In this document: piece by piece, positions 6,391 to 37,552 of the stretch | Numbering within the stretch: the first letter of the stretch is position 1 | Layout: each line of letters opens with the position of its first letter | From: Phyllobates terribilis | Taxonomy: Eukaryota | Direction of reading: 5' to 3' | Length of the DNA stretch: 64,000 bases | Assembly: GCF_046119375.1 (NCBI RefSeq) | Contig: NW_027362761.1 | Span: 736,994,001 to 737,058,000 of the forward strand | The notes under the pieces: model-generated | Seen by the model: only the letters and a program-made list of their open reading frames with translations | What the model was told of the DNA's origin: nothing | The model's database searches: none | Translations under genes and position numbers: made by a program

Positions 6391-6555
6391 TACTTCAACT
6401 GAAGTTGTCTCATCTGACTGAGAGGCTCCTGCCAGTAATAGGAGTTTTTCTCAGATTTGGTATATGCTTTGCTTATCAGTTTTTTGTCAAATCATTAATA
6501 ATACTACATCATCTTTTAAAATAAATAACAATTTTAGTGATAGGTTCTCTTTAAA

Positions 6556-6886
6556 TTAAAAAAATGCAAGTTTAATATTGCCGTAAACATATTGACTAGG
6601 AGACCTAGGAGAATCATATTGCCAGGTAAGTTTTACTGCACCAAGAATGTAATCAAAACGAATAAAAAAGTGCGGAATTGTTTTTTTTATGGCAATTTTA
6701 CTGCAGTTGCAATTTTTTTCCCATTTTTCAGTACATTGTATGTTAAATTGAATGTTATAATTCAAAAGTATGACTTGTCCTGCAAAAAAGACCTCATATG
6801 GCAATGTCAGCGGAAAAATAAAAAAGTTATGGCTCTTGGAAGGCGAATAATAGACCAAAGCATAAAAGCAGAAAATCCCCTGTTCC
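6556..6886 (+). mobile_element. Probable right-end fragment of a non-autonomous piggyBac-like element
   Basis: Shares the AAAATAAAAAAGTT(A/C)TGGCTCT(T/G)GGAAG subterminal block with 23272-23537, which ends GGGG|TTAA. Confidence 0.45.
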
Positions 6887-7310
6887 TTAAAAGGGTTGTC
6901 CACTACCCCTTCTTAAAAACTATATTCCCCTTTGTATAACAAAACAAAAATAATTGATACTCAGCACCTGCATCGGTACCATTCCAGCAATGTCAGCGCT
7001 GGCTCTCTTGAGGCCGGTGTGACATTGTTATGCCATGTGACTACTGCAACCAATCAGCGGCTGCTATTGAACTGCTGTGCTCTGACTTTGGACAAACCTT
7101 GGACATTTGGGAGAGGTGTGAGTAATGCAGACCCCTAGCAGCCACTAATTGGCTGCACTGCTCACATGGCATAACATTGTCATGTGAGCCTAGGGAGACC
7201 TGGCGCAAACATTACTGGAAGGGCTCCGGTATGGGAGGTGTCTGCTTTATTTTATAAGGGGGACACAATATTTAAGAAGAAGTTATCCTATTAGTGGACA
7301 ACCAATTTAA
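6887..7310. mobile_element. TTAA-flanked MITE (T2/Kolobok-like)
   Basis: TTAA-AAGGGTTGTCCACTA ... TAGTGGACAACC-AATTTAA, with a partly palindromic interior. Confidence 0.7.
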
Positions 7311-7519
7311 GTAGATAATGGTCAGGTATGATCCGCAAAAGGGATGACATTAGGACATGATCCGAGTCTCACAGACCAGTAACCTGAATCCATTTTCAAA
7401 ACAGATGTGTGTGTATGGGTCAATGAAACTATTACTCTGTGCTCTTTCCAAGAAAACGGACAGTACTAGGACGTATCACAAGGATTTGTGAATGTAGCCT
7501 AAGTCCTCATTCAGACATA

Positions 7520-9019: not shown

Positions 9020-9223
9020 TTTGCGATGTGTTTTAATTTTAATATTCATTATATTTGCTATACTCTTCATGAATAGTACCCCTGGGTGATATCCCATAGT
9101 TTGAGAGATTTAATAAATCTATTGGATAGTAATCTATCTCTCAAACTATGAAATAGCACCCTGGGGTACAATCCATGAATAGAATGGCAAATAGTGAATG
9201 TTAAAATTAAAACACATAGCACA

Positions 9224-16359: not shown

Positions 16360-16795
16360 AACCATATGGTTTCAGTGTGTTTAATCTTCTTATCCATTGA
16401 AGCGCTTTAGTTTTAAGTAACTTGACTCTATCACCCCCTCTTCTCAAGGGGGAAACATGGTATATGATTTGAAATTTGCATTTTTTTTCAGAGTGTCCAC
16501 ATTTGGTACTCTGAGGAACAATTATGGATGTGATCAACCTTTTGCAGTGTCCACGTAATCTTTGGTTAGTAGGGGAAATGACATGGGACTTTAAGACAAG
16601 AATAAACCATCGTAAATATACATTATGTAAAAAGAGGTTGGATTTACTAGTGCCTAAACATTTTGTTGAATATGAACACTGAAAAAAATGTAACATTTCG
16701 AATCATTGACCATGTATCCCCCTTGAGAGGAGGGGATGATAGAGTCAAGTTACTTAAAATTAAAGAGCTTCAATGGATAAGAAGATTAATATATA
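16360..16795. mobile_element. Two head-to-head degenerate Penelope-type GIY-YIG C-terminal fragments
   Basis: Minus strand ...HVSPLRRGGDRVKLLKTKALQWIRRLNTLKPYG and plus strand ...HVSPLRGGDDRVKLLKIKELQWIRRL. Confidence 0.7.
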
Positions 16796-25650: not shown

Positions 25651-28600
25651 GTGTGGGGTTCCCCGTAATTTTAGTCTCTAGCGGAGGTTAAGCAGACGGC
25701 TGGGGCAGATGTTTGAAGCCTGGGAAGGGGGTAATACCCACGGAGCTTCCCAGGCTACTAATATCAGCCCCCAGCTGAATACCTAGCCTTTACTAGCTAT
25801 TAAAATGGGGGACCTCCCAAAAAATGACGTGGGGTCCCCCCTATTTTAATAGCTAGCAAAGGCTAGGCAGACAGCTGGGGGCTGATATTAATAGCCCAGG
25901 AAGGGTGCCATGAATATTGGCCCCCTCCCAGGCTAGAAACACTAGCCGTCAGCCGCCCCAGAAATGGCAGATCCATAGGATGTGCCAATTCTGGCACTTA
26001 GCCTCGCTCTTCCCACTGCCCTGTAGCGGTGGCAGTGGGGTAATAGGGTTGGGGTTGATGTCAGCTTATAATGCCAGCTGACATCAAGCCCAGGTTAGTA
26101 ATGGAGAGGCATCTATAAGACACCCCCATTACTAACCCCATAGTCAAAGTTAAAAAAAACACAAACACCCAGAATAAAGTCCTTTAATTGAAATAAAGAC
26201 ACATTCCTTTAATGTTCTAAATTAAACCCTACTTACCGTATCACCCATTCCAGCTGAAGCCAACGATCTCCTGCAATAAAAATAAAATAATAAACCAACC
26301 TCATCCTTACCTTTCCATGATTCCCAGGACAGCTTCAGCTCTGCTACATTGACATGACAGGCTGGAGCGCAGCAGAACGCTGCCATCCAGCTTGCCATGC
26401 CGCAGACATTGAGAAGCTCCTCAGTGAAGCTCCTCAGTGTCTGGCTGTGACGGCATCCAGATGAGCCGAGTTCATGTCCAATGAACTGAGCTCACCTCAT
26501 GCACGTCACTGACAGCGTGGGAGAATTCTCCTGCGCTCACCGCTTGAGCAGGAGACTCCTCCTCTTCTTCTAGGACAACCACCTCCTGCCGCACGCTATT
26601 CAAAGTCTTCTACAGCATGTAGATGACCGGAATAATGATGCTGATGATGGCATTGTCAGCGCTAACTAGTTTAGTAGCCATTTCAAAACTGTGCCGGACA
26701 CGCGCGCGGGACAGCGAGGGGCCGGAGAACACGCGCACCACCAAGATAAGAGAAGAAGACACTACGTTTGGAATAAGGGGAAGAGACAAAGAGCATTTAT
26801 CCAAATCTCAAAATAAATGAGAGATTAGGTAAAATGCGCTCAATCCCAACAGCATAACAGAATAACCTAGTGGGGCATCCATACAATAGAGTTCACCATA
26901 AAATCTCATACATAGGTCCCTTATATTCCCAGGGGATCACTCAAAAGGTATATAAACCAGATACATTAGTACAGTTCAACGTGAGTCAATTTCCCTCCAA
27001 GGGAAAGAAAAGGACAATGAGGAAGTCTTGAAAGATGCTCCATCTTGTCAGCTGTAGAGTGTCTTGAACATCAAATTAAAGGAGGTCCATAAAGAGGGTG
27101 CACAATGACAATTAGTTAGTAGCCCAACATCTAAAAGAGTGAAGAAAAGCACAAAATTAAAAACAAAAGTAAAAACGAGCTAAAAACTGAAGCACGGACT
27201 GAAAGATCAGAGAAAGAGTAACACTGAGGGAGAGCACCACAAGACAAAAAGGCCATATCATAAAAATGAGGAGAAACCCAAATTTTCATTAAGACCACGC
27301 GGTACCAGGGTATCCAGGACGCTAATCCATCCGGCTTCCTTTTGCGCAAGGCAAAGTTTATAGTCACCGCCCCGAGAGCCCAGATGCACCACATCAATGC
27401 CACGCACCATCAGGCTGCGTGGGTCACAACCATGAACTTTTTTAAAATGTCGTGGTAGTGTTCTAAGCTCCCGGGGGTCCGACACAGATTTGGCTGCGCC
27501 AATGTCCCGCACATGCTCCCGCACCCGAATCCTTAGTTCCCTCGTAGTAAGTCCTACGTAGATTTTCTGGCAACTGCACGTGGCATAATAAACCACGTGT
27601 GTTATACTACAGGAGATGTATTTCGAAATTTGGTAGGTGCTGGAGCCATCCGAAGTCGTAAAGGATGAGCAGCGAAGGACATTGGCGCAAGCCAAGCAGT
27701 GGCCACATGGATAGGATCCAACCCTGGGCCGGCGTGACCCAAAAGGGTTAGGTGCTGGTGGGATGTAGTGACTAGACGTAACCAGATCGCCCAAAATTTT
27801 GGCTCATCTGGCAGTCATGAGTGGAAATTGTCCCACCACGTCCCTAAGGGAGGGCTCCGCGCCAAGAACATTCCAATGTCGCGAGATGACCCGCCTCATA
27901 GTTTCCCACTCATGGTTATAGGTGGAAATGAAGCGGGTCCTCTCAGGGAACCCAGAAGGGGGTCTCCGAGAGGGGTAAAGGAGATGACTGCGGGGGGTGC
28001 TGCGGGCTCTACCGTAGCCACGGCCAATGCATCGATTGCTGTAACCTCTCTGTTTGCAACGTTCCGTCAGGTCCGCCGCCTGCTTCTCAAATTTAGCATC
28101 CGTAGAACAGATGCGCTTAATCCTAAGGAACTGTCCGACCGGGACGGCCCTAATTGTTGAAGAAGTATGTCCAGAGGCAGCATGCACCAACGAGTTCACA
28201 GCCGTGGGCTTCCTGTAGATGTCAGTCTGGATGGAGGAGTGTGAGTCCACCTCCAGAGTGACGTCCAGGAAGTCCATACGTGTGAGGCTGTGAATATACG
28301 TGAGTTTAATCCCCCACTCATTGGCATTTAGCTGTCTCATGAAGTCGTCAAGCTCCTCCACAGAACCCCGCCAAAAGAATAAGACATCATCGATATACCT
28401 GAGCCATGTCACAACCTGGCTGGCACAACATCGCCCCCAAAAATTTCCCTCTCCCACGCACCGAGGAAGAGGTTTGCATACGAAGGCGCACAGGCCGCAC
28501 CCATGGCTGTGCCACGTCGCTGCAGGTATACCGTGTCTTTGAAAAGAAAATATTTATGGCAAATGATAAAGCGGAGGAGCTCGAGGATAAATTCACGTGA

Positions 28601-29378
28601 AGGGCCGTCCAGGTCGGAGGTCCCAAGGAAAAGACGAGCAGACGCTAGGCCAAGGTCATGACCAATGCAGGTATACAGACTCTCGACATCGGCCGTGACA
28701 ATGATAGTGCCCGGTTCCAAGGAGACGCCATCAACCCTAGTAAGGACGTCCGTCGTGTCCTTGACAGAGGATGGAAGGGTCTCTACAAGTGGTCTCAAGA
28801 GACTATCAACATATTGAGAGATTGGACCACAGAGACCCCCAAACCTGACACGATCGGACGTCCTGGAGGGCTGGTGGCGTCCTTGTGTACCTTAGGAAGT
28901 AGATAAAAGGTAGCTGCTTTGGGGGAACGTGCAGTCAGAGCCTCCACAGTCCTCTTATCTATAATACCCCTCTCGCAGGCCCGAGCCAGGATTCCCTGTA
29001 GGGTAGCGGAGAAGGAGGTCGTGGGATTGTACGGCAGCCTAGAGTAAGTGTCCTTATCTCTCAGCTGTCGCAATGCCTCCCTCTCATATTTATAGTGGGG
29101 CCACAGGACGATGTTTCCTCCCTGGTCTGTTGGTTTAATAACCATGTCCTTAAGTTTTTTGAGTTAACCAGGGATTGAAGCTTGAAGAGGACAATTTGCA
29201 TATTCCAGGTGCCTTCTGGGAAAAGCGAAGAGTCTCCTTCAGCTAGAAGATCGTTGGGTACAGCCGGGACCAGCTGCTTGGAAAGCATCGCCAAACCGCC
29301 AAAATTTGTTTAATTTGTTTGTCCTAGGGTATCACAAGAAAGAAGACAGACATCAAGTCAGCAGGGACAAGGAGCAGC

Positions 29379-30337
29379 ATGGCAGATGTGACAACCTACA
29401 TGGTGAGCTGCAACATGTGCTACATGTTCACAGATCGACCAGAAGCTGAAACCAACTTCACCTGCCAGAAGTGTAGACTACTGGCTCTTTTAGAAGAAAA
29501 GGTGCGGGGACTGGAAGAAAGAATTGCGACATTAAAACTCATCAAGGAAAATGAAGACTTCCTGGACAGAACAGAAGCGTCACTACTGGTCACGGAAAGT
29601 CAAGGAAGCATCAGAGAACCTCCAGAGGCAGACAAGTGGAGGCAAGTGACCAAAAGAAGCAAGAAGACCATGGAGACACCACCAACCACACAACTGAGAA
29701 ACAGATTCCAAGGACTAGTGGAGGACGAAGATGGCACACCTAAGGATGAGGAACTACCAGCAAGCAAAAAAGGAAAGAGCACCCAGAAACACCCAGAAGC
29801 GACAAGAAAAAGGACAGCCAAGAAGGGAAGAAGAGTGGTGGTGGTGGGAGACTCACTACTGAGAGGAACAGAAGCAGCTATCTGCAGACCGGACATAACC
29901 GCAAGAGAAGTATGCTGCCTCCCAGGGGCAAAGATCAAGGATGTTACCGATAGGATACCGAAGCTCATCAGTTCCAAGGATGTCCACCCATTTCTTCTGA
30001 TACATGTTGGCACCAATGACACGGCAAAGAAGGACCTACCGACAATCTGCAAGGACTTTGAAGCATTGGGGAAGAAAGTAAAAGAACTGGATGCGCAGGT
30101 AGTTTTTTCTTCTATCCTTCCAGTAGACGGGCATGGCGTCAGGAGATGGAACAGGATCCTTGAGGTGAACAACTGGCTGAGACGATAGTGCAGACAACAA
30201 GGATTTGGATTCCTGGACCACGGTGTGAATTACCTCTATGACGGACTCCTTGCCAGAGACGGACTACACCTCAACAAACCCGGGAAACACACATTCGCCA
30301 GGAGACTCGCAACACTCATCAGGAGGGCGTTAAACTA
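29379..30337 (+). pseudogene. CR1 ORF1 (Cys zinc finger, coiled coil, SGNH esterase) with one premature TAG at 30186-30188
   Basis: CNMC...CQKC, GDSLLRG, HVGTND. Reading through the TAG gives CRQQGFGFLDH...RDGLHLN...RRALN*. Confidence 0.9.
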
Positions 30338-30349
30338 GAAGAAGAGGGG

Positions 30350-33281
30350 ATGGGAAGAAAAACGCCGGACACGATCATGCAACCAGAGAACATACTAATG
30401 AAAGATATGAAGTGCGACAAAGAAGGTCCAAGACAAGATACTTGGAAGGGAGGTAAGAAAATTTCTAATACAATCCACAGGGAGAAGATTGGAACAAAAC
30501 AAAATCGTGTAAACTGCGTGCTAGCAAATGCCAGGAGCCTGACAAACAAGATGGATGAACTGGAAGCAGAAATATCTACAGGTAACTATGACATAGTGGG
30601 AATAACCGAGACATGGTTAGATGAAAGCTATGACTGGGCAGTTAACTTACAGGGTTACAGTCTGTTTAGAAGGGATCGAAGAAGTCGGAAAGGGGGTGGA
30701 GTCTGTCTATATGTAAAGACGTGTCTAAAGCCTACAATACGGGAGGATGTATGGGAGGGAAATGAGGAGGTCGAGTCCTTATGGGTGGAGATACATGGGG
30801 CAAAAAACAATAATAAAATTATCATAGGAGTCTGTTATAAACCACCAAATATAGCAGAAACCACGGAAAGTCTATTAATGAGACAAATAGACGAAGTAGC
30901 AAAAAATAATGGGGGACTTCAACTACCCCGATATAGACTGGGAAACCGAAAGCTGTAGATCTCAGAAAGGAAACAGGTTTCTGTCAATTATCAAAGACAA
31001 TTATTTGTCACAACTTGTGCAGGAACCAACTAGAGGGACGGCCCTTTTAGACTTAATATTAACTAACAGGCCAGACAGAATAACTGAGGTGCAGGTCGGG
31101 GGGCACCTGGGAAATAGTGACCACAACATTATACAATTCCACATGTGCTTCAGTAGGGTGCCCAGCAAGGGAGTCACAAAAACACTGAACTTTAGGAGGG
31201 CAAAGTTTGATCAGCTAAGAGATGCCCTTCACCTTATAGACTGGGATAGTATCTTTAGTAATAGGAGCACGGATAGAAAATGGGACATTTTCAAAACAGT
31301 CCTACATAGTCACTGTAGAAGGTACATACCTTATGGGAATAAAAGGGCTAGGAATAGGAGGAAGCCAATGTGGCTAAATAAGGAAGTCAAGAGGGCAATG
31401 AAAAACAAAAAAAGGGCTTTCGGTAAACTTAAACAAGAAGGCAGCGAGGAAGCGCTAATATCTTATAGGGAAAAAAACAAAATCTGTAAGAAACAAATAA
31501 GAATAGCAAAAGAGGAGACAGAGAGACTAATTGCCAAGGAAAGTAAAACGAATCCCAAACTGTTCTTTAACTATATAAACAGTAAAAGGATTAAAACTGA
31601 TGGAGTTGGCCCATTGAAAAATAACCTGGGTAAAATCATAGAGGGCGATGAGGGTAAAGCAAACCTACTCAATAGCTTCTTCTCCACTGTTTTCACAAAA
31701 GAAAACAATTTATCGGAGGAAATGCAGAGTGATAAAGTAAATGCTCCGCTAAATATCACCCACCTAACCCAGGGGGAAGTTCAGAAACGCCTAAATAATA
31801 TCAAAATAGACAAGTCACCAGGCCCAGATGACATACACCCCCGGGTACTAAAAGAATTAAGTAATGTGATAGACAGGCCGCTGTATCTTATATTCAAGCA
31901 CTCTTTATGGACAGGGACTGTCCCACTAGACTGGCGCCAAGCAAATGTGGTACCAATATTCAAAAAGGGGTCTAAAAGTGACCCTGGGAACTATAGACCA
32001 GTCAGCTTAACGTCTGTTGTGGGTAAATTGTTTGAAGGATTTCTTAGAGATGCTATTGTAGAATATCTTAATGATAATAACTGTCTAACTCCATATCAAC
32101 ATGGATTCATGAGGGATCGCTCCTGCCAAACAAACCTGATCGCCTTCTACGAGGAGGTGAGCTCACAGCTGGACTGCGGAGAGTCAGTGGATGTTGTATA
32201 CCTTGACTTCTCCAAAGCGTTTGATACCGTGCCACACAAAAGGTTGGTATATAAAATGAGAATGCTTGGTCTGGGGGATAATGTGTGCAAGTGGGTAAAT
32301 AGCTGGCTGAGTGATAGAAAGCAGAGGGTGGTTATCAATGGAGTAAGCTCAGGGGGTGTCAGGGTTACTAGCGGGGTGCCTCAAGGGTCTGTCTTGGGCC
32401 CTATATTATTTAATATATTTATTAATGATCTAGTGGAAGGGTTGCATAGTAAAATAGCAATATTTGCAGATGATACTAAACTTTGTAAAGTAGTTAATAC
32501 AGATGAGGACAGGGCACAGCTACAGGAGGATTTAGATAAATTGGGGAGTTGGGCCAAAAAATGGCAAATGGGGTTCAATGCCGATAAATGTAAGGTCATG
32601 CACATGGGAAAGAAAAACAGCAGTCACCCATACATATTAAATGGGAAACCGTTGGGGAAATCTGACATGGAGAAGGACCTGGGCGTCTTGGTTAACAGCA
32701 AATTAAATTGGAGTGCCCAGTGTCAGGCAGCAGCTGCGAAGGCAAATAGAGTCATGGCATGCATCAGAAGAGGAATAGGGGCATATGATGAGAACATTGT
32801 TCTTCCTCTGTATAAAGCGCTGGTAAGGCCGCACTTAGAATATTGTGCACAGTTCTGGGCTCCGGTGCTCAGGAAAGACATATTGGAGCTAGAGAGGGTA
32901 CAAAGGAGGGCAACTAAGGTAATAAAGGGAATGGAGGGACTAGAATACCCAGAGAGGTTGTCAAAATTAGGCCTATTTACATTGGAAAAGAGAAGGCTTA
33001 GGGGAGACCTCATAAACATGTATAAATACATCAGGGGGCAGTACAGAGATCTCTCCCATGACCTGTTTATACCAAGGATAGTGACAAAGACGAGGGGGCA
33101 CACTATGCGTCTGGAGGAAAGGAGGTTCCTGCACCAGCATAGAAGGGGATTCTTTACGGTCAGAGCCGTGAGACTCTGGAACTCTCTGGGAGAGGAAGTG
33201 GTGATGTCCAACTCACTTAATGAGTTCAAGAGAGGCCTGGACGCCTTTCTTGAGAACAATAAAATTACATCTTATGCTTAG
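30350..33281 (+). pseudogene. CR1 ORF2 (APE endonuclease + RT) with one frameshift near 30909
   Basis: ANARSL, GITETW, GDFNYP, SDHN, YLDFSKAFD, GVPQGSVLGP, FADDTK; 790 aa open after the frameshift. Confidence 0.93.
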
Positions 33282-34693
33282 TTAATTAATCCAGGGATTT
33301 AATCTTACTGCCAGATTGGTGTCGGGAAGTGAATTTTTCCTCAGTGATGTAAATTGGCCTATACCTCATGGTTTTTTTGTTGCCTTCCCCTGGATCAACG
33401 CTGCGGAATAGCTGCAGTGCACAAGAAATAGGCTGAACTGGATGAACGCTTGTCTTTTTTCGGCCTTATAAACTATGTAAATATGTAACTATGTAACTAT
33501 GAGTTGTTGAATCGCTTGACGTTGGGCGGAGGTTAAATTGTCAATCTTTCTCCGTGTGGAGAGTTTTATAAAATCCTCCGCCACTAAGTTGACAAAAATT
33601 TCCACTGCCGGACAAATAGACAAGGGAGGGAACCTCGTTGATTTGGGGTTCCTAATCTGTGGTAACCCACCTGTGGGAGGAGTCGTTTGTTTCAAAAAGA
33701 GGTCCTCCAGATGTTGTAGGGCCTCCTCCTCCGCCACCACCGGGTCATGATCACCATCCGACCTGAAATGGAGTTTTTTTAGAATCAGTTTCCGAGCAAA
33801 CAGATGGAGGTCCTTAAGGGCCGTGAAATAGTCAAAAGAATTTGTAGGGGAAAATGACAGGCCAATACTAAGGACCTCCATCTGTGTCTCAGTCAAAACA
33901 TGATTGGTTAAGTTCATAACACGGAGCCCCCCCCGGGGATCACCAACCTGGTATGGGGTTGTCCGCTTCCTCCTATTGTTCGGTCTCGTTTGGATACGTT
34001 CAGTTAGTTGAGTAAAGGAGCCACCCTGGGAGTCCACGCTAGTAACTGGTATCTGATTCTCACTAGAGGTTCCAGAGGCATTTGAAGTGGACCTGGACCG
34101 TACATGTGAGTTGTTGCGAGACCTAGGCCTTCGATTTTCAACTGGTGATCGCCACCGATACACTCTATGGGTGAACTTATCCTGTGTATCGCGTTGAAAT
34201 TTTTTTATTTTCATTGTTTGGATTTCTTTAACAAGTTTCTGACAATCCACGTCAACCTCCTCATTAAGTTTCTTAAGGTCATCACTAGATAGATCCTTCC
34301 TAAGTTGTCCTTGTAGGAGATCAATCTCTAATTCTAACTCCCGAAGAGATTTTTCATTCTGCTCTTTGAGGAGACCCAAAAAGCGCAGAGAGCAGGTGTT
34401 AGCCAGAGATTCCCAGTTATTTTTAAATGACTCATCTTCAATTTTAAAAGAAGGAAAGATCAGTATACTCAGGCCTCTGGGGATCAGAGCTTTCTCAATA
34501 TATTTGGTTAGAAAGGCATGGCTCCACCAGGTTCGACATCTCCGTTTAATTAAGACCTTGAAACTGGTAAAGCTCTCCCTCAGTCTCTGATCTGTGTCCA
34601 GCACCACCAAACTCCCATTGCTAGATAAGTCATCTAACTGCGCGAGCCAAGTGGTGTCTCGTGCACGAAAATCCATTATGGGCCAGGCAAGAA

Positions 34694-35269
34694 CTGTAAA
34701 AATACAGAGAAACATATATGTAAGAAGAAAACTGGCCAAATGCATAATATAAGACGAACCATGGTGCTAAGACAATTTGTCAAGCACCAGGTTCGTATTG
34801 CCTACTCATTAGTAACATGCAAAAAAAGGGGAGAACACAAGAGCAACATGGCAAAGAGACAAAATCTTTATTAATAATAAATTACCAAAGTGATAAAAGT
34901 TATACAAAAATGACAAGGCAAGGGGATAAGGAGAGAAGGTGCCAGAGACAAGGCATTTCCTGGAAATCAAACGCTGGGCAGTCCAAACCTTATGGGTACA
35001 TGTAGGTATAGAGACAATGGAGTAAGACATGGATATATAACCAAATAGATCCGAGGGTATGGACAGTCCATCAGTAAAGAGACCACCCCACTATGAGACA
35101 GAAAACAGCTCGGCAAACATAAGAATAAATATCATGTGCAAATTGCAAACAGTAAATGGTAGCCGAGATAAGATTCAAGTCTGAAAATTAGGTATATACA
35201 TATCTTACACCATATTTATATGGGTTGCAGTGTCCAACAAGTACCCAGAGTATGGTTTAAATTACTCAC
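34694..35269 (-). other. Putative spliceosomal intron in the Penelope 5' leader
   Basis: Donor GG|GTGAGTAA at 35269 and acceptor TTTTTACAG ending at 34694, 17 nt before the ATG at 34676. Confidence 0.55.
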
Positions 35270-35345
35270 CCAGCCAAAATAAACACAGGTGAGGGAGAGC
35301 CCGCGGATGCCAGGAAAGCCCCAGAAAGTGCTGCCAGTAAGGAAT

Positions 35346-35386
35346 GCGCCCCGACGCGTGTTTCGCCTATCTTTATCAAGAGGCGC
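35346..35386 (-). ncRNA. Minimal type-I hammerhead ribozyme with the U3-A8 covariant core in the Penelope leader
   Basis: GCGCCUC UUGAUAA A G-AUAGG-C GAAAC ACGC GUC GGGGCGC: 7-bp stem I, 1-bp stem II, short stem III, GUC cleavage triplet. Confidence 0.75.
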
Positions 35387-37028
35387 TGCATAGTGCACCT
35401 AAAAGGACCTGATTATATACGCCCCCATCCAGTCACATGATTCAGTGAGAGAGGGGGACTCATTGGTGTATAGCGGCGCGTGTGCCCGGAACCACGCCCC
35501 CCCGCTGCACGCGTCACAGCCGTCAGGTCCCGACACGCGCCCGGGGGTGCGCCCAGGAAACGCCCCCAGAGGCGTGCCAGGGACGGAGAGACAGCCGGAC
35601 ACGCGCGCGGGACAGCGAGAGGCCGGAGAACACGCGCACCACCAAGATAAGAGAAGAAGACACTACGTTTGGAATTCTAACTAGTTTAGTAGCCATTTCA
35701 AAACTGTGCAGAAGGGTACAGAGGTCCTTAATATGGTCCCATTCCATAAACGTGATATGCCCCACGTCCGTACTGCATTGGATTAGGCTATACGACATGA
35801 CATACTGTGTCAGGGCTCGTGCCATAGTTGCTGCAACATGTGCAGAGTGGAATTCCACTGCGTCGGCAACATTGCATATCAACCTGTTAACTGACATAGA
35901 CAAAGACCTCTGTATTGATGCAAATCGATGACATGAGGCATGCGAACGGCGGAAGTGAGCACACAGCTTCCGTACTTTCTGAAGCAGTTCATCCAGGCCG
36001 GGATAGTGGTGAAGAAATCACTGTACCACCAGGTTGAGGACGTGAGCCATGCAAGGCACGTGTGTGAGTTTGCCTCGGCGTAGGACCGCCAACAGGTTCA
36101 CACCGTTATCGCACACGGCCTTTCCTGGCTCCAGGTTCAGCGGAGACTGCCATTGCTGAAACTGAGCCTGGAGAGCCATCCACAACTCTTCAGCTGTATG
36201 ACTGCGATCTCCAAGGGATATTAAATTGAAGACTGCCTAATTGCGGTGAGCACTGGCTGCGCAGTACGGAGGTGGTGTTGATTCGCTCAGCACTGTTGAA
36301 TGCGTGTCTCGTTAAGGCAGAGGTTGATTGCGCAGGTGGAGGCCCTAGAGGAGGTGGAGGATGCAGAAGCAGTGGAGGAAGTGTGAAATACAGAGGTTTC
36401 TTCTGCAAGCCTTGGGGATTCCAAGATTTGTGGAGCAGCCCCTTCCCAGACTGTCCCCACAGCCACCAGAGTCACCCAGTGCCCAGAAAGCGAGATGTGA
36501 CGCCCTTGGCCATGCTTACTCGTCCAGGTGTCTGTGGTTAAATGCACCTTGGCAGATATAGATTTAGTCAAGGAACGGGTGATGTTGTCTGTGACATGCT
36601 GGTGTAGCGCAGGCACAACTTTCTTAGAGAAGTAATGGCGACTGGGCAACTGGTACTGGGGGACTGTGATGACCATCAACTTTCGGAAACAGTCTGTATC
36701 TACCGTCTGAAAGGCAGCATTTCCGTGGCCAACTGATTTGAGATGGTGGAATTCAATTTCTTAGCTTTGTCATGTGCAGGATGAAACAATCTTTTACGTG
36801 ACCACAACTGCGGGACCGAGGGCTGGCTGCGGTGCTGAGAGAGGGCGGAGTACCAAGCTTATTCCTCCTTCCACCACAACCTCTCTTTTTCCCACTCATG
36901 TTGCTCAGATACTGCAGTAGGAGCACGCTATTAGCAAGACAAAATTACATATTTTCCTCTGCAACAGTTCTGCACACCTGAATTTCAGTGGCACTAAATG
37001 ACAAGGTAAGATATGTCTTCCTGTATAA

Positions 37029-37521
37029 TCACAAGCAAGAATAGAAGGAAAGGCAGCACTCACCCAGTCTTCTTTAAAACGTTCCTTTATTTTTGTGTGC
37101 GGAGCATTTCAGCGTGCAGCTTTGGACTGAGACCCCGAAGGGTATGCGGGGGAGAGGAAAAAAGGGACAACGGCCGTTTCGCTGCCTTCCGGCGCTTCAA
37201 TGGGACCCGTTGACTTTGGACCCGTTGAAGCGCCGGAAGGCAGCGAAACGGCCGTTGTCCCTTTTTTCCTCTCCCCCGCATACCCTTCGGGGTCTCAGTC
37301 CAATGCTGCACGCTGAAATGCTCCGCACACAAAAATAAAGGAACTTTTTAAAGAAGACTGGGTGAGTGCTGCCTTTCCTTCTATTCTTGCTTGTGATTGA
37401 AATATTTCTTGGATGTGCACCACCGTTTAAGTCTTGAAGCACACAGTCTGAATTATGCCCTGGTGATTGATCCTCTGAAAAAAACAGCGTGGTGCCAGAA
37501 TGTTTCTCTTGCATTTGAACT
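37029..37521. mobile_element. Palindromic Penelope pLTR-derived mini-insertion
   Basis: 174-bp arms 37027-37200 and 37225-37398 with about 2 mismatches. 19-bp duplication GATATGTCTTCCTGTATAA at 37010-37028 and 37522-37540. AATAAA at 37334 and GGTGAGT at 37361. Confidence 0.8.
37218..37260 (+). ncRNA. Hammerhead-like motif at the palindrome centre (core mutated)
   Basis: GGAC CCGUUGA AG C-GCC-GGAA-GGC-AG C GAAAC GGCC GUU GUCC. Stem III is the palindrome ACGGCCGU. Core differs from CUGAUGA at two positions. Confidence 0.5.
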
Positions 37522-37552
37522 GATATGTCTTCCTGTATAACATTACTAACCG

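What the first reader, a model, noticed from the sequence alone, without database searches (positions are those of the whole stretch)
35346..35386. Minimal hammerhead with the compensatory U3-A8 core in the Penelope leader
The core reads UUGAUAA instead of CUGAUGA. C3 and G8 form a tertiary Watson-Crick pair, and the U3-A8 swap is known to retain activity, so this looks like covariation rather than decay. The 7-bp stem I and GUC site are intact, and stem II is a single G-C pair. It lies ~75 nt upstream of a splice donor, where cleavage would define the 5' end of the element RNA.
Basis: partly seen in the sequence, partly recalled or inferred. Interest (0 to 1): 0.75.

Follow-up and report, generated by a model that had tools for sequence, protein, structure and literature searches.

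The report
Frog Penelope hammerhead with U3-A8 core
This is a dead copy of a poison-frog Penelope-like jumping gene whose small hammerhead ribozyme motif carries a paired U3-A8 swap that the whole element lineage conserves, a variant already described for these elements in 2014.

Summary
The 41-nt motif is exactly where and as described: minus strand 35386..35346, 7-bp stem I, UUGAUAA core, single G-C helix II and a GUC site. A single copy is only weakly above chance (0.04 per shuffled window). The support comes from homology. The same motif sits at the same place in both pseudo-LTRs of intact relatives in Phyllobates, Dendrobates, Ranitomeya, Anomaloglossus and Hyla. U3 and A8 never vary there, N7 varies freely, and stems I and II and the helix III palindrome covary.

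It is not new. Cervera and De la Peña (2014) reported U3-A8 Penelope min-hammerheads, and this scan has 19 notes that mention a U3-A8 hammerhead core in this genome.

The window copy itself is dead. It has a LINE insertion and frameshifts, no second hammerhead, and a private G-to-A change that breaks the dimerisation palindrome.

The motif starts at the predicted transcription start, about 33 nt after a conserved TATA box. Cleavage would therefore clip off a capped leader of about 35 nt rather than define the 5' end.

The single-pair helix II shared by the three Phyllobates subfamilies, one of them with intact copies, is the one mildly new feature. No cleavage or RNA-end evidence could be obtained.

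The parts
35346..35386 (-). Type I minimal hammerhead motif. Stem I 5' strand 35386-35380; core UUGAUAA 35379-35373 (U3 = 35379, A8 = 35374); unpaired A 35372; G10.1 35371; loop 35370-35366; C11.1 35365; GAAA 35364-35361; loop III CACGCG 35360-35355; U16.1 35354; C17 35353; stem I 3' strand 35352-35346.
   Evidence: 59.1 bits against model R1, which was built partly from this sequence; homologous motif in relatives.
35359..35359 (-). Minority A in this copy where the family majority has G. It breaks the self-complementary ACGCGCGU that would form helix III in a dimer.
   Evidence: 35 of the X1 contigs and 47 of the X2 contigs read the other letter, carrying about 90% of the depth; the double-hammerhead fold is -21.9 against an MFE of -34.7 kcal/mol here, and -32.7 against -35.7 in L001.
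35413..35419 (-). TATATAA box, first T 33 nt upstream of the motif; predicts a transcription start near A35387.
   Evidence: a TATA-like box lies about 30-42 nt upstream of the motif in most relatives (not evident in the fish locus L013). The start site is inferred, not measured.
35432..35440 (-). TCATGTGAC E-box-like motif, conserved upstream of the TATA box in several relatives.
35462..35466 (-). CCAAT box.
35269..35387 (-). Predicted non-coding first exon, from the predicted start to the donor CTGG|GTGAGT.
   Evidence: donor conserved in relatives. No spliced RNA was seen.
34694..35268 (-). Predicted 575-nt 5'-UTR intron with GT..AG ends. It contains AATAAA at 34872-34867, and the pseudo-LTR ends about 50 nt after that signal.
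   Evidence: the L001 repeat 1900-2868 equals 6453-7421 at 99.8%.
33502..34676 (-). N-terminal part of the PLE ORF. ATG at 34676-34674; homology to the intact relative stops at 33502.
   Evidence: (80% identity to the P. terribilis protein P0001).
29166..33501 (+). Nested LINE insertion (EEP endonuclease plus RT ORFs) that splits the PLE ORF.
26976..29165 (-). 3' part of the PLE coding region, with frameshifts. No 3' pseudo-LTR hammerhead was found.

Best explanation
The motif is the pseudo-LTR hammerhead of an endonuclease-positive Penelope-like element (PLE) of Phyllobates terribilis. In this PLE lineage of hyloid frogs, the C3-G8 tertiary pair of the hammerhead core has been replaced by U3-A8 and kept under selection.

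Inferred mechanism: like other PLE min-hammerheads, it has no helix III of its own. It would act only when two copies pair through the self-complementary A-CGCGCG-U segment and swap their stem I strands. The two copies are the 5' and 3' pseudo-LTR copies on one transcript, or copies on two transcripts. This double hammerhead would cut after GUC.

The motif begins at the predicted start of the pseudo-LTR promoter. Cutting at both copies would therefore release a unit-length, uncapped RNA with 5'-OH and cyclic-phosphate ends. This is the processing or circularisation role proposed for PLE hammerheads, possibly assisted by the element's protein.

In the Phyllobates subfamilies helix II has shrunk to the single G10.1-C11.1 pair. 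The copy in the window is an inactive relic: its palindrome is broken at 35359, it has no partner hammerhead, and its ORF is split by a LINE and frameshifted.

Shown: the sequence, homology, conservation, covariation and element anatomy. Inferred: the transcription start, splicing, dimer formation in vivo, and any cleavage.
For: Identity of the element:
- N-terminal ORF hits frog PLE proteins.
- The intact relative L001 has a 1067-codon stop-free frame (1064 aa from its first start codon) with an RT signal and a GIY-YIG-type C-terminus.
- Relatives carry RVT_1, HTH_animal and GIY-YIG domains.
- L001 pseudo-LTRs are 969 bp and 99.8% identical.

Conservation:
- The Phyllobates relatives are 76% identical in the pseudo-LTR, but the motif is conserved, including UUGAUAA.
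- In other genera the pseudo-LTR no longer aligns, yet the motif persists in both pseudo-LTRs.
- Only N7, the known free core position, varies (U, A, G, C).
- 9 of 9 distinct rows with letters at those columns read U-A at positions 3 and 8.
- 3 of 7 stem I pairs and 1 of 2 helix II pairs show double-sided changes, and pairing collapses when the partners are slid.
- The helix III palindrome covaries: ACGCGCGU, ACACGUGU, ACGCGU, ACGU.

Phylogeny: all U3-A8 hyloid elements form one clade. A fish relative has CUGAUGA, and a Xenopus element has U3-A8.

Population: contigs show the family majority differs from the window at 35359 and 35345, but not at 35379 or 35374.

Folding: the predicted lowest-energy dimers of the Dendrobates, Ranitomeya and Engystomops motifs are exactly the double hammerhead.

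Literature:
- U3-A8 PLE min-hammerheads, dimer model, low in vitro activity (PMC4209133).
- Engineered hammerheads with a single G-C helix II cleave efficiently (PMC544870).
- C3/G8 single mutants kill an Anolis PLE hammerhead, the double mutant partly rescues it, and that ribozyme is protein-assisted (PMC11167929).
Against: - No cleavage assay and no RNA ends. All available runs are contigs, the two low-depth 'RNA?' contigs cross both the cleavage site and the donor uncut and unspliced, and no intron joint was seen.
- For the Phyllobates type, the lowest-energy dimer is not the double hammerhead. It is an alternative hairpin between the stem I 5' strand and the purine-rich helix II remnant.
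- A one-pair helix II departs from the 6-8 bp helix II reported for PLE min-hammerheads (PMC4209133).
- Model R1 and alignment A4 were built from U3-A8 sequences, so the 9-of-9 count is biased toward that state.
- One search lists only the best-supported differences (342 rows hidden), so minority C3 or G8 copies cannot be excluded.
- In Anolis the hammerhead was dispensable for insertion in vitro, and no RNA ends mapped to it (PMC11167929).
Confidence: 0.72

Rival explanations
1. The block is hammerhead-derived but no longer cleaves in the Phyllobates subfamilies. After helix II was lost, it is retained as an RNA dimerisation element, a protein-binding element or a conformational switch at the 5' end of the transcript.
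For: Helix II is one pair in all three Phyllobates subfamilies. The predicted lowest-energy dimer uses an alternative hairpin. Copies with intact ORFs and 99.8% identical pseudo-LTRs carry this form, so it did not stop recent transposition. PLE insertion in vitro does not need hammerhead cleavage (PMC11167929).
Against: Every catalytic core position (U4, G5, A6, A9, G12-A14, A15.1-U16.1, C17) and the 3-8 pair remain intact in the window and L001 subfamilies, whose pseudo-LTRs are only 76% identical to each other. Engineered hammerheads with a single G-C helix II are highly active (PMC544870). The L001 double-hammerhead fold is within 3 kcal/mol of the MFE.
Confidence: 0.17
2. The conserved block is constrained at DNA level as core-promoter sequence (initiator and downstream elements) of the pseudo-LTR. 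The hammerhead resemblance is incidental or vestigial.
For: The motif starts at the predicted +1, about 30-42 nt after a TATA-like box in most lineages examined. As a pattern in one window it is only weakly above chance.
Against: Compensatory changes in stems I and II and in the helix III palindrome preserve RNA pairing while the sequence changes. The invariant positions are exactly the hammerhead core, and the variable one is N7. The same motif class is established in PLE pseudo-LTRs across eukaryotes (PMC4209133).
Confidence: 0.06
3. It is a chance look-alike, or the random decay of a canonical CUGAUGA hammerhead in this one copy.
For: The relaxed pattern occurs 0.56 times per shuffled window. 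Rfam gives no hit.
Against: The same U3-A8 core (UUGANAA, only N7 varying) sits at the homologous position in 7 related element lineages and in both pseudo-LTRs of intact copies. No well-supported alternative letter appears at 35379 or 35374 in species contigs. The Rfam negative fails its positive control.
Confidence: 0.03

Closest known systems
PLE min-hammerheads with the U3-A8 core (Schistosoma mansoni Cercyon; Cervera and De la Peña 2014, PMC4209133)
   Same: Type I motif in the pseudo-LTR of a Penelope-like element. U3-A8 in place of C3-G8. An unpaired nucleotide between A9 and G10.1. Conserved G10.1-C11.1. No helix III of its own, with a palindromic 15-16 segment that implies action as a dimer.
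   Different: The host is a vertebrate (hyloid frogs) and the PLE lineage is different. Stem I is longer (7 bp against 4-5). Helix II is a single pair here against 7-8 bp there. The frog relatives from other genera have 2-5 bp.
Xenopus and other vertebrate PLE min-hammerhead families (about 9,000 in X. tropicalis; PMC4209133)
   Same: Amphibian PLE pseudo-LTR hammerheads in many consensus families. The X. laevis element fetched here also has U3-A8 (UUGACAA) with the same TATA, hammerhead, short exon and GT layout.
   Different: The Xenopus element is distant in the ORF tree on a long branch. It has a 5-bp helix II and a 4-nt palindrome.
Poseidon PAc hammerhead of Anolis carolinensis (PMC11167929)
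   Same: A vertebrate PLE hammerhead whose activity depends on the 3-8 pair: single mutants are dead and the double mutant partly rescues. It is the model for protein-assisted cleavage.
   Different: PAc has C3-G8 and overlaps the start codon. Here the motif is in a non-coding first exon at the predicted transcription start, about 84 nt from its cleavage site to the intron donor.
Engineered miniribozymes with helix II reduced to G10.1-C11.1 (Hendry et al. 2004, PMC544870)
   Same: A single G-C pair closed by a short flexible linker replaces helix-loop II.
   Different: Those are synthetic trans-cleaving constructs with a C3-G8 core and long arms. The frog motif is natural, cis or dimeric, has U3-A8 and an extra unpaired A, and is untested.

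Membership tests
Hammerhead ribozyme (type I) | Conserved core: N3 U4 G5 A6 N7 N8 A9 ... G12 A13 A14, with positions 3 and 8 able to form a Watson-Crick pair | tested here: met
   UUGAUAA ... GAAA. U3-A8 is a Watson-Crick substitute for C3-G8. The same core is seen in relatives, with only N7 varying.
Hammerhead ribozyme (type I) | A15.1-U16.1 pair and a cleavable H17 (not G) followed by stem I | tested here: met
   A35361, U35354, C35353, then GGGGCGC paired with GCGCCUC over 7 bp.
Hammerhead ribozyme (type I) | Three helices around the core (I, II, III) | tested here: inconclusive
   Stem I is 7 bp. Helix II is one G-C pair. Helix III exists only as an intermolecular palindrome, and that palindrome is broken in this copy. 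Relatives form full double hammerheads in silico.
Hammerhead ribozyme (type I) | Match to the curated Rfam hammerhead models | tested here: not met
   No hit at E up to 10. The control shows the models also miss a canonical PLE min-hammerhead and score the Dendrobates relative 12.6 bits against a gathering score of 34, so this test has little weight.
Hammerhead ribozyme (type I) | Site-specific self-cleavage | not testable with these tools
   Only contigs were available, with no raw reads and no ends.
PLE minimal hammerhead (Cervera and De la Peña 2014) | Located in the pseudo-LTR of a Penelope-like element | tested here: met
   The motif lies in the repeat that flanks the RT/GIY-YIG ORF in L001, L005, L006, L009, L010 and L011. 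The window leader is homologous to it.
PLE minimal hammerhead (Cervera and De la Peña 2014) | Unpaired nucleotide between A9 and G10.1, and a conserved G10.1-C11.1 | tested here: met
   A35372, G35371, C35365. G-C is invariant in 9 of 9 rows.
PLE minimal hammerhead (Cervera and De la Peña 2014) | Palindromic 15.x-16.x segment for dimeric helix III | tested here: not met
   The window copy reads ACACGCGU, which is not self-complementary. The family majority and L001 read ACGCGCGU, which is. So the feature is met by the family and failed by this copy.
PLE minimal hammerhead (Cervera and De la Peña 2014) | Long helix II (about 6-8 bp) | tested here: not met
   One pair in the three Phyllobates subfamilies; 2-5 bp in the other frog relatives.
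Penelope-like element (EN+) | Single ORF with RT and a C-terminal GIY-YIG endonuclease, flanked by direct pseudo-LTRs | tested here: met
   Met for the intact relative L001. The window copy keeps the N-terminus and a frameshifted 3' part split by a LINE.
Penelope-like element (EN+) | Spliceosomal intron retained in the element | tested here: inconclusive
   GT/AG signals are conserved between the window and L001, and donors follow the motif in all relatives. No spliced RNA joint was seen.

The most novel reading that the evidence does not exclude
The Phyllobates subfamily carries a natural miniribozyme: a hammerhead with a U3-A8 core and helix II reduced to one G-C pair that still cleaves as a dimer, perhaps with help from the element's protein. 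It is placed exactly at the pseudo-LTR transcription start. Paired cleavage at the 5' and 3' copies would then remove the cap and release a unit-length RNA ready for circularisation. The polyadenylation signal of the 5' pseudo-LTR would be bypassed because it lies inside the 5'-UTR intron.
Probability: 0.2. Interest if true: 0.55.

Novelty: new member of a known kind. Interest (0 to 1): 0.3.

Why it matters
- It gives a clean natural-history confirmation that the hammerhead 3-8 tertiary pair can be swapped to U-A and then held by selection. This holds across a whole retroelement lineage of at least five frog genera, and also in a distantly placed Xenopus element.
- It identifies intact frog elements (L001-L003) that would be good material to test two open points about PLE hammerheads. 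One is whether they cleave in vivo at all. The other is how small helix II can get in nature.
- The layout of TATA box, hammerhead at +1, short exon and an intron holding the poly(A) signal suggests how these elements avoid premature polyadenylation in the 5' repeat.
- For the window itself there is no consequence: this copy is ordinary dead repeat DNA.

Tried and rejected
- Rfam at gathering and at E up to 10 found nothing. I rejected this as evidence after the controls.
I replaced it with my own regular-expression scan.
- Pfam on the window ORF pieces gave no family. Identity came from homologues instead.
- MAFFT misaligned the distant hammerheads. I built the model from the five alignable ones only.
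- Model hits at 16432-16454 and 16716-16738 are the arms of an unrelated small palindromic element with no GAAA or GUC, so I rejected them.
- The 37010-37540 palindrome has a hammerhead-like arm that I could not fit to the core by eye. I left it to its own finding.
- RNA evidence: all runs are contigs, with no joints and no ends.
- P0022 could not be located.
- No motif was found in the Ascaphus locus L012. The Rana motif (UCGAGGA) and the Engystomops motif (CAGAGGA) have unusual cores that I could not interpret further.
- The Lünse et al. 2017 paper is not held.
Only stop-free frames translated unchanged were used for the tree.

Full report
**Observation**

The minus strand of the window from 35386 down to 35346 reads GCGCCUC UUGAUAA A G-AUAGG-C GAAA CACGCG UC GGGGCGC. 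This has the layout of a type I hammerhead:
- a 7-bp stem I, including one U-G pair;
- a 5' core with U at position 3 (35379) and A at position 8 (35374);
- one unpaired A, then a single G10.1-C11.1 pair closing five nucleotides;
- GAAA, a six-nucleotide segment in place of helix III, and U16.1;
- C17, with the would-be cut between 35353 and 35352.

The description is accurate.

It is the only such motif in the window. Taken alone the pattern is weak evidence. A relaxed descriptor gives 0.56 matches per dinucleotide-shuffled window with a stem I of 5 bp or more, and 0.04 with 7 bp.

Rfam reports nothing even at E up to 10, but this says little. The same search misses a canonical CUGAUGA Penelope hammerhead from a fish relative. 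It gives the Dendrobates relative only 12.6 bits against Hammerhead_1, whose gathering score is 34.

**Context**

The genome is the golden poison frog, Phyllobates terribilis. On the minus strand, downstream of the motif, lie:
- a GT..AG interval of 575 nt (35268-34694);
- an ORF starting at 34676 that is 80% identical to a P. terribilis protein, with relatives across poison frogs and Hyla.

An intact relative (locus L001, one of three near-identical copies L001-L003) has:
- a 1067-codon stop-free frame, 1064 aa from its first start codon;
- a weak RVT_1 signal;
- a C-terminus with the CX2C...VVYYATC...YVG...R..EH layout, which aligns to the GIY-YIG region of a Ranitomeya protein.

Its homologues carry the RVT_1, HTH_animal and GIY-YIG domains. 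It is flanked by 969-bp repeats that are 99.8% identical. That is the anatomy of an endonuclease-positive Penelope-like element (PLE).

The window copy maps to L001 in three blocks: 35660-35305, 34987-33502 and 29165-26976. A LINE (EEP endonuclease plus RT, plus strand) is inserted between the last two. The 3' coding part is frameshifted. No second hammerhead exists in the window. This copy is dead.

**Is U3-A8 covariation or decay?**

In L001-L003 the pseudo-LTR is only 76% identical to the window, yet the motif is conserved with UUGAUAA in both pseudo-LTRs. The differences are confined to the helix II loop and one loop III base.

In other genera the pseudo-LTR no longer aligns at all, but the motif is still there, at the same place and in both repeats:

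| Locus | Species | Motif |
|---|---|---|
| L005 | Dendrobates tinctorius | CCCUC UUGAGAA A GCGGC-loop-GCCGC GAAA CGCGCG UC GGGGG |
| L006-L008 | Ranitomeya imitator | UUGAAAA core |
| L009 | Anomaloglossus baeobatrachus | UUGAUAA core |
| L010 | Hyla sarda | GUCCC UUGAGAA A GUC-GGGU-GAC GAAA CGCACG UU GGGAC |

Across these lineages only N7 changes (U, A, G). That is the one core position known to be free. Positions 3 and 8 read U-A in all 9 distinct rows that have letters there. Three of seven stem I pairs and one of two helix II pairs show changes on both sides. Pairing falls from 86% to about 50% when the partners are slid. One caveat applies: the search model was trained on U3-A8 sequences.

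An ORF tree puts all these elements in one clade (support 80/89). The three Phyllobates subfamilies form a 100/100 subclade. Outside that clade:
- an Engystomops element has C...G with an odd A4 (CAGAGGA);
- a Rana element has UCGAGGA;
- a fish element (Engraulis) has canonical CUGAUGA;
- a Xenopus laevis element, on a long branch next to the fish one, again has U3-A8 (UUGACAA).

Contigs of two DNA samples of the species were laid at 80% likeness. The family majority differs from the window at 35359 and 35345. No well-supported difference was listed at 35379 or 35374, though only the best-supported rows were shown.

That condition is not met, so the covariation reading stands.

**Dimer model**

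The 15.1-16.1 segment of the family is A-CGCGCG-U, an 8-nt self-complementary sequence. Other lineages keep self-complementarity with different letters: ACACGUGU in Engystomops, ACGCGU in the fish, ACGU in Xenopus and ACAUGU in Rana. This is the signature of the double hammerhead proposed for PLE min-hammerheads (PMC4209133, PMC6765202).

RNAcofold returns exactly that structure as the minimum-energy dimer for the Dendrobates, Ranitomeya and Engystomops motifs: two swapped stem I helices, two helix II hairpins and one shared 8-bp helix III.

For L001 the double hammerhead costs -32.7 kcal/mol against an MFE of -35.7. The MFE uses an alternative hairpin between the stem I 5' strand and the purine-rich helix II remnant. 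For the window copy the values are -21.9 against -34.7, because the A at 35359 puts two A-C mismatches in helix III. About 90% of the contig depth has G there. So the window copy is a damaged representative.

**Position in the transcript**

A TATATAA box (35419-35413) lies 33 nt before the motif, preceded by TCATGTGAC and CCAAT. A TATA-like box about 30-42 nt upstream and a GT donor about 30-110 nt downstream recur in the frog relatives and in Xenopus. The fish locus shows neither clearly.

The pseudo-LTR ends about 50 nt after an AATAAA (34872-34867) that lies inside the predicted intron. Splicing would therefore remove the 5' copy of the poly(A) signal. The 3' copy, which has no acceptor downstream, would be used. 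A full-length RNA would then carry one hammerhead at its very 5' end and one about 500 nt from its 3' end, a natural pair for the dimer.

All of this paragraph is inference from sequence. I found no spliced joints, no ends and only two low-depth putative RNA contigs. Those contigs cross the site uncut and unspliced.

**Comparison with what is known**

Cervera and De la Peña (2014, PMC4209133) described min-hammerheads in the pseudo-LTRs of all PLEs. Their description included:
- the unpaired base before G10.1, the conserved G10.1-C11.1 and the palindromic helix III segment;
- low activity, seen only as dimers;
- explicitly, a U3-A8 covariant core in Schistosoma Cercyon elements, with about 1,300 hits;
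- about 9,000 min-hammerheads in Xenopus tropicalis.

In an Anolis PLE, C3 and G8 single mutants abolish cleavage and the double mutant partly rescues it. That ribozyme needs the element's protein and is dispensable for insertion in vitro, and no RNA ends map to it (PMC11167929).

The central claim of the finding is therefore a new instance of a published variant. The scan itself holds 19 notes that mention a U3-A8 hammerhead core in this genome (unchecked).

The one feature that departs from the published description is helix II. It is a single G-C pair in all three Phyllobates subfamilies, including the one with intact copies, against 6-8 bp in the literature and 2-5 bp in the other frog relatives. 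Engineered miniribozymes with exactly this reduction cleave efficiently (PMC544870). So it does not rule out activity, but nothing here shows activity.

**Verdict**

It is a genuine, selected U3-A8 PLE hammerhead lineage, but it is already known as a kind. The proposed 5'-end role is doubtful as stated, and this copy is a relic.
- I file it as a new member of a known kind, with modest interest.

Noticed in passing
window 35688-35731: A stretch of about 44 nt just upstream of the pseudo-LTR has summed contig word depth near 3x10^5 in both DNA samples, against 10^2-10^3 for the PLE. It is part of an extremely abundant repeat. Loose ends next to it read CTGATGATGGCATCGTCAGCG, a small inverted repeat.
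   Followed up: no
L001:1-1990 (also L002, L003): About 40 tandem copies of a 49-bp unit lie directly upstream of the hammerhead-bearing part of the 5' pseudo-LTR in the intact Phyllobates elements. The window copy has no tandem array there.
   Followed up: partly
window 34867-34872, L001:2810-2815: A conserved AATAAAGATTTTGT lies inside the predicted 5'-UTR intron, about 50 nt before the pseudo-LTR end. This suggests that splicing removes the 5' copy of the element's poly(A) signal.
   Followed up: partly
L011:4551-4596 and 9143-9188 (Engystomops pustulosus): Both pseudo-LTRs of an intact PLE carry a motif with core CAGAGGA (A in place of U4), a 5-bp helix II and a perfect ACACGUGU palindrome. 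Its predicted dimer is a double hammerhead despite the non-canonical U4 position.
   Followed up: partly
L015:8514-8562 (Rana temporaria): A hammerhead-like motif with core UCGAGGA (the CU dinucleotide apparently swapped), a 4-bp helix II and an ACAUGU palindrome. Only one copy was seen.
   Followed up: no
L003:8385-8431 minus strand: A canonical C3-G8 min-hammerhead (CUGAUGA, 4-bp helix II, ACGCGU palindrome) from another PLE family lies next to a U3-A8 element. Both core types therefore coexist in the P. terribilis genome.
   Followed up: no
window 16432-16454 and 16716-16738: Inverted arms of a small palindromic element contain CCCCCUUGAGAAGAGGGGG. This mimics stem I plus the 5' core but has no GAAA or GUC, so it is not a hammerhead.
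   Followed up: yes
L010:3343-3407 (Hyla sarda 5' pseudo-LTR): The 5' copy of this element's hammerhead has G5 changed to C and an insertion in helix II, while the 3' copy is intact. The two pseudo-LTR copies can decay independently.
   Followed up: no
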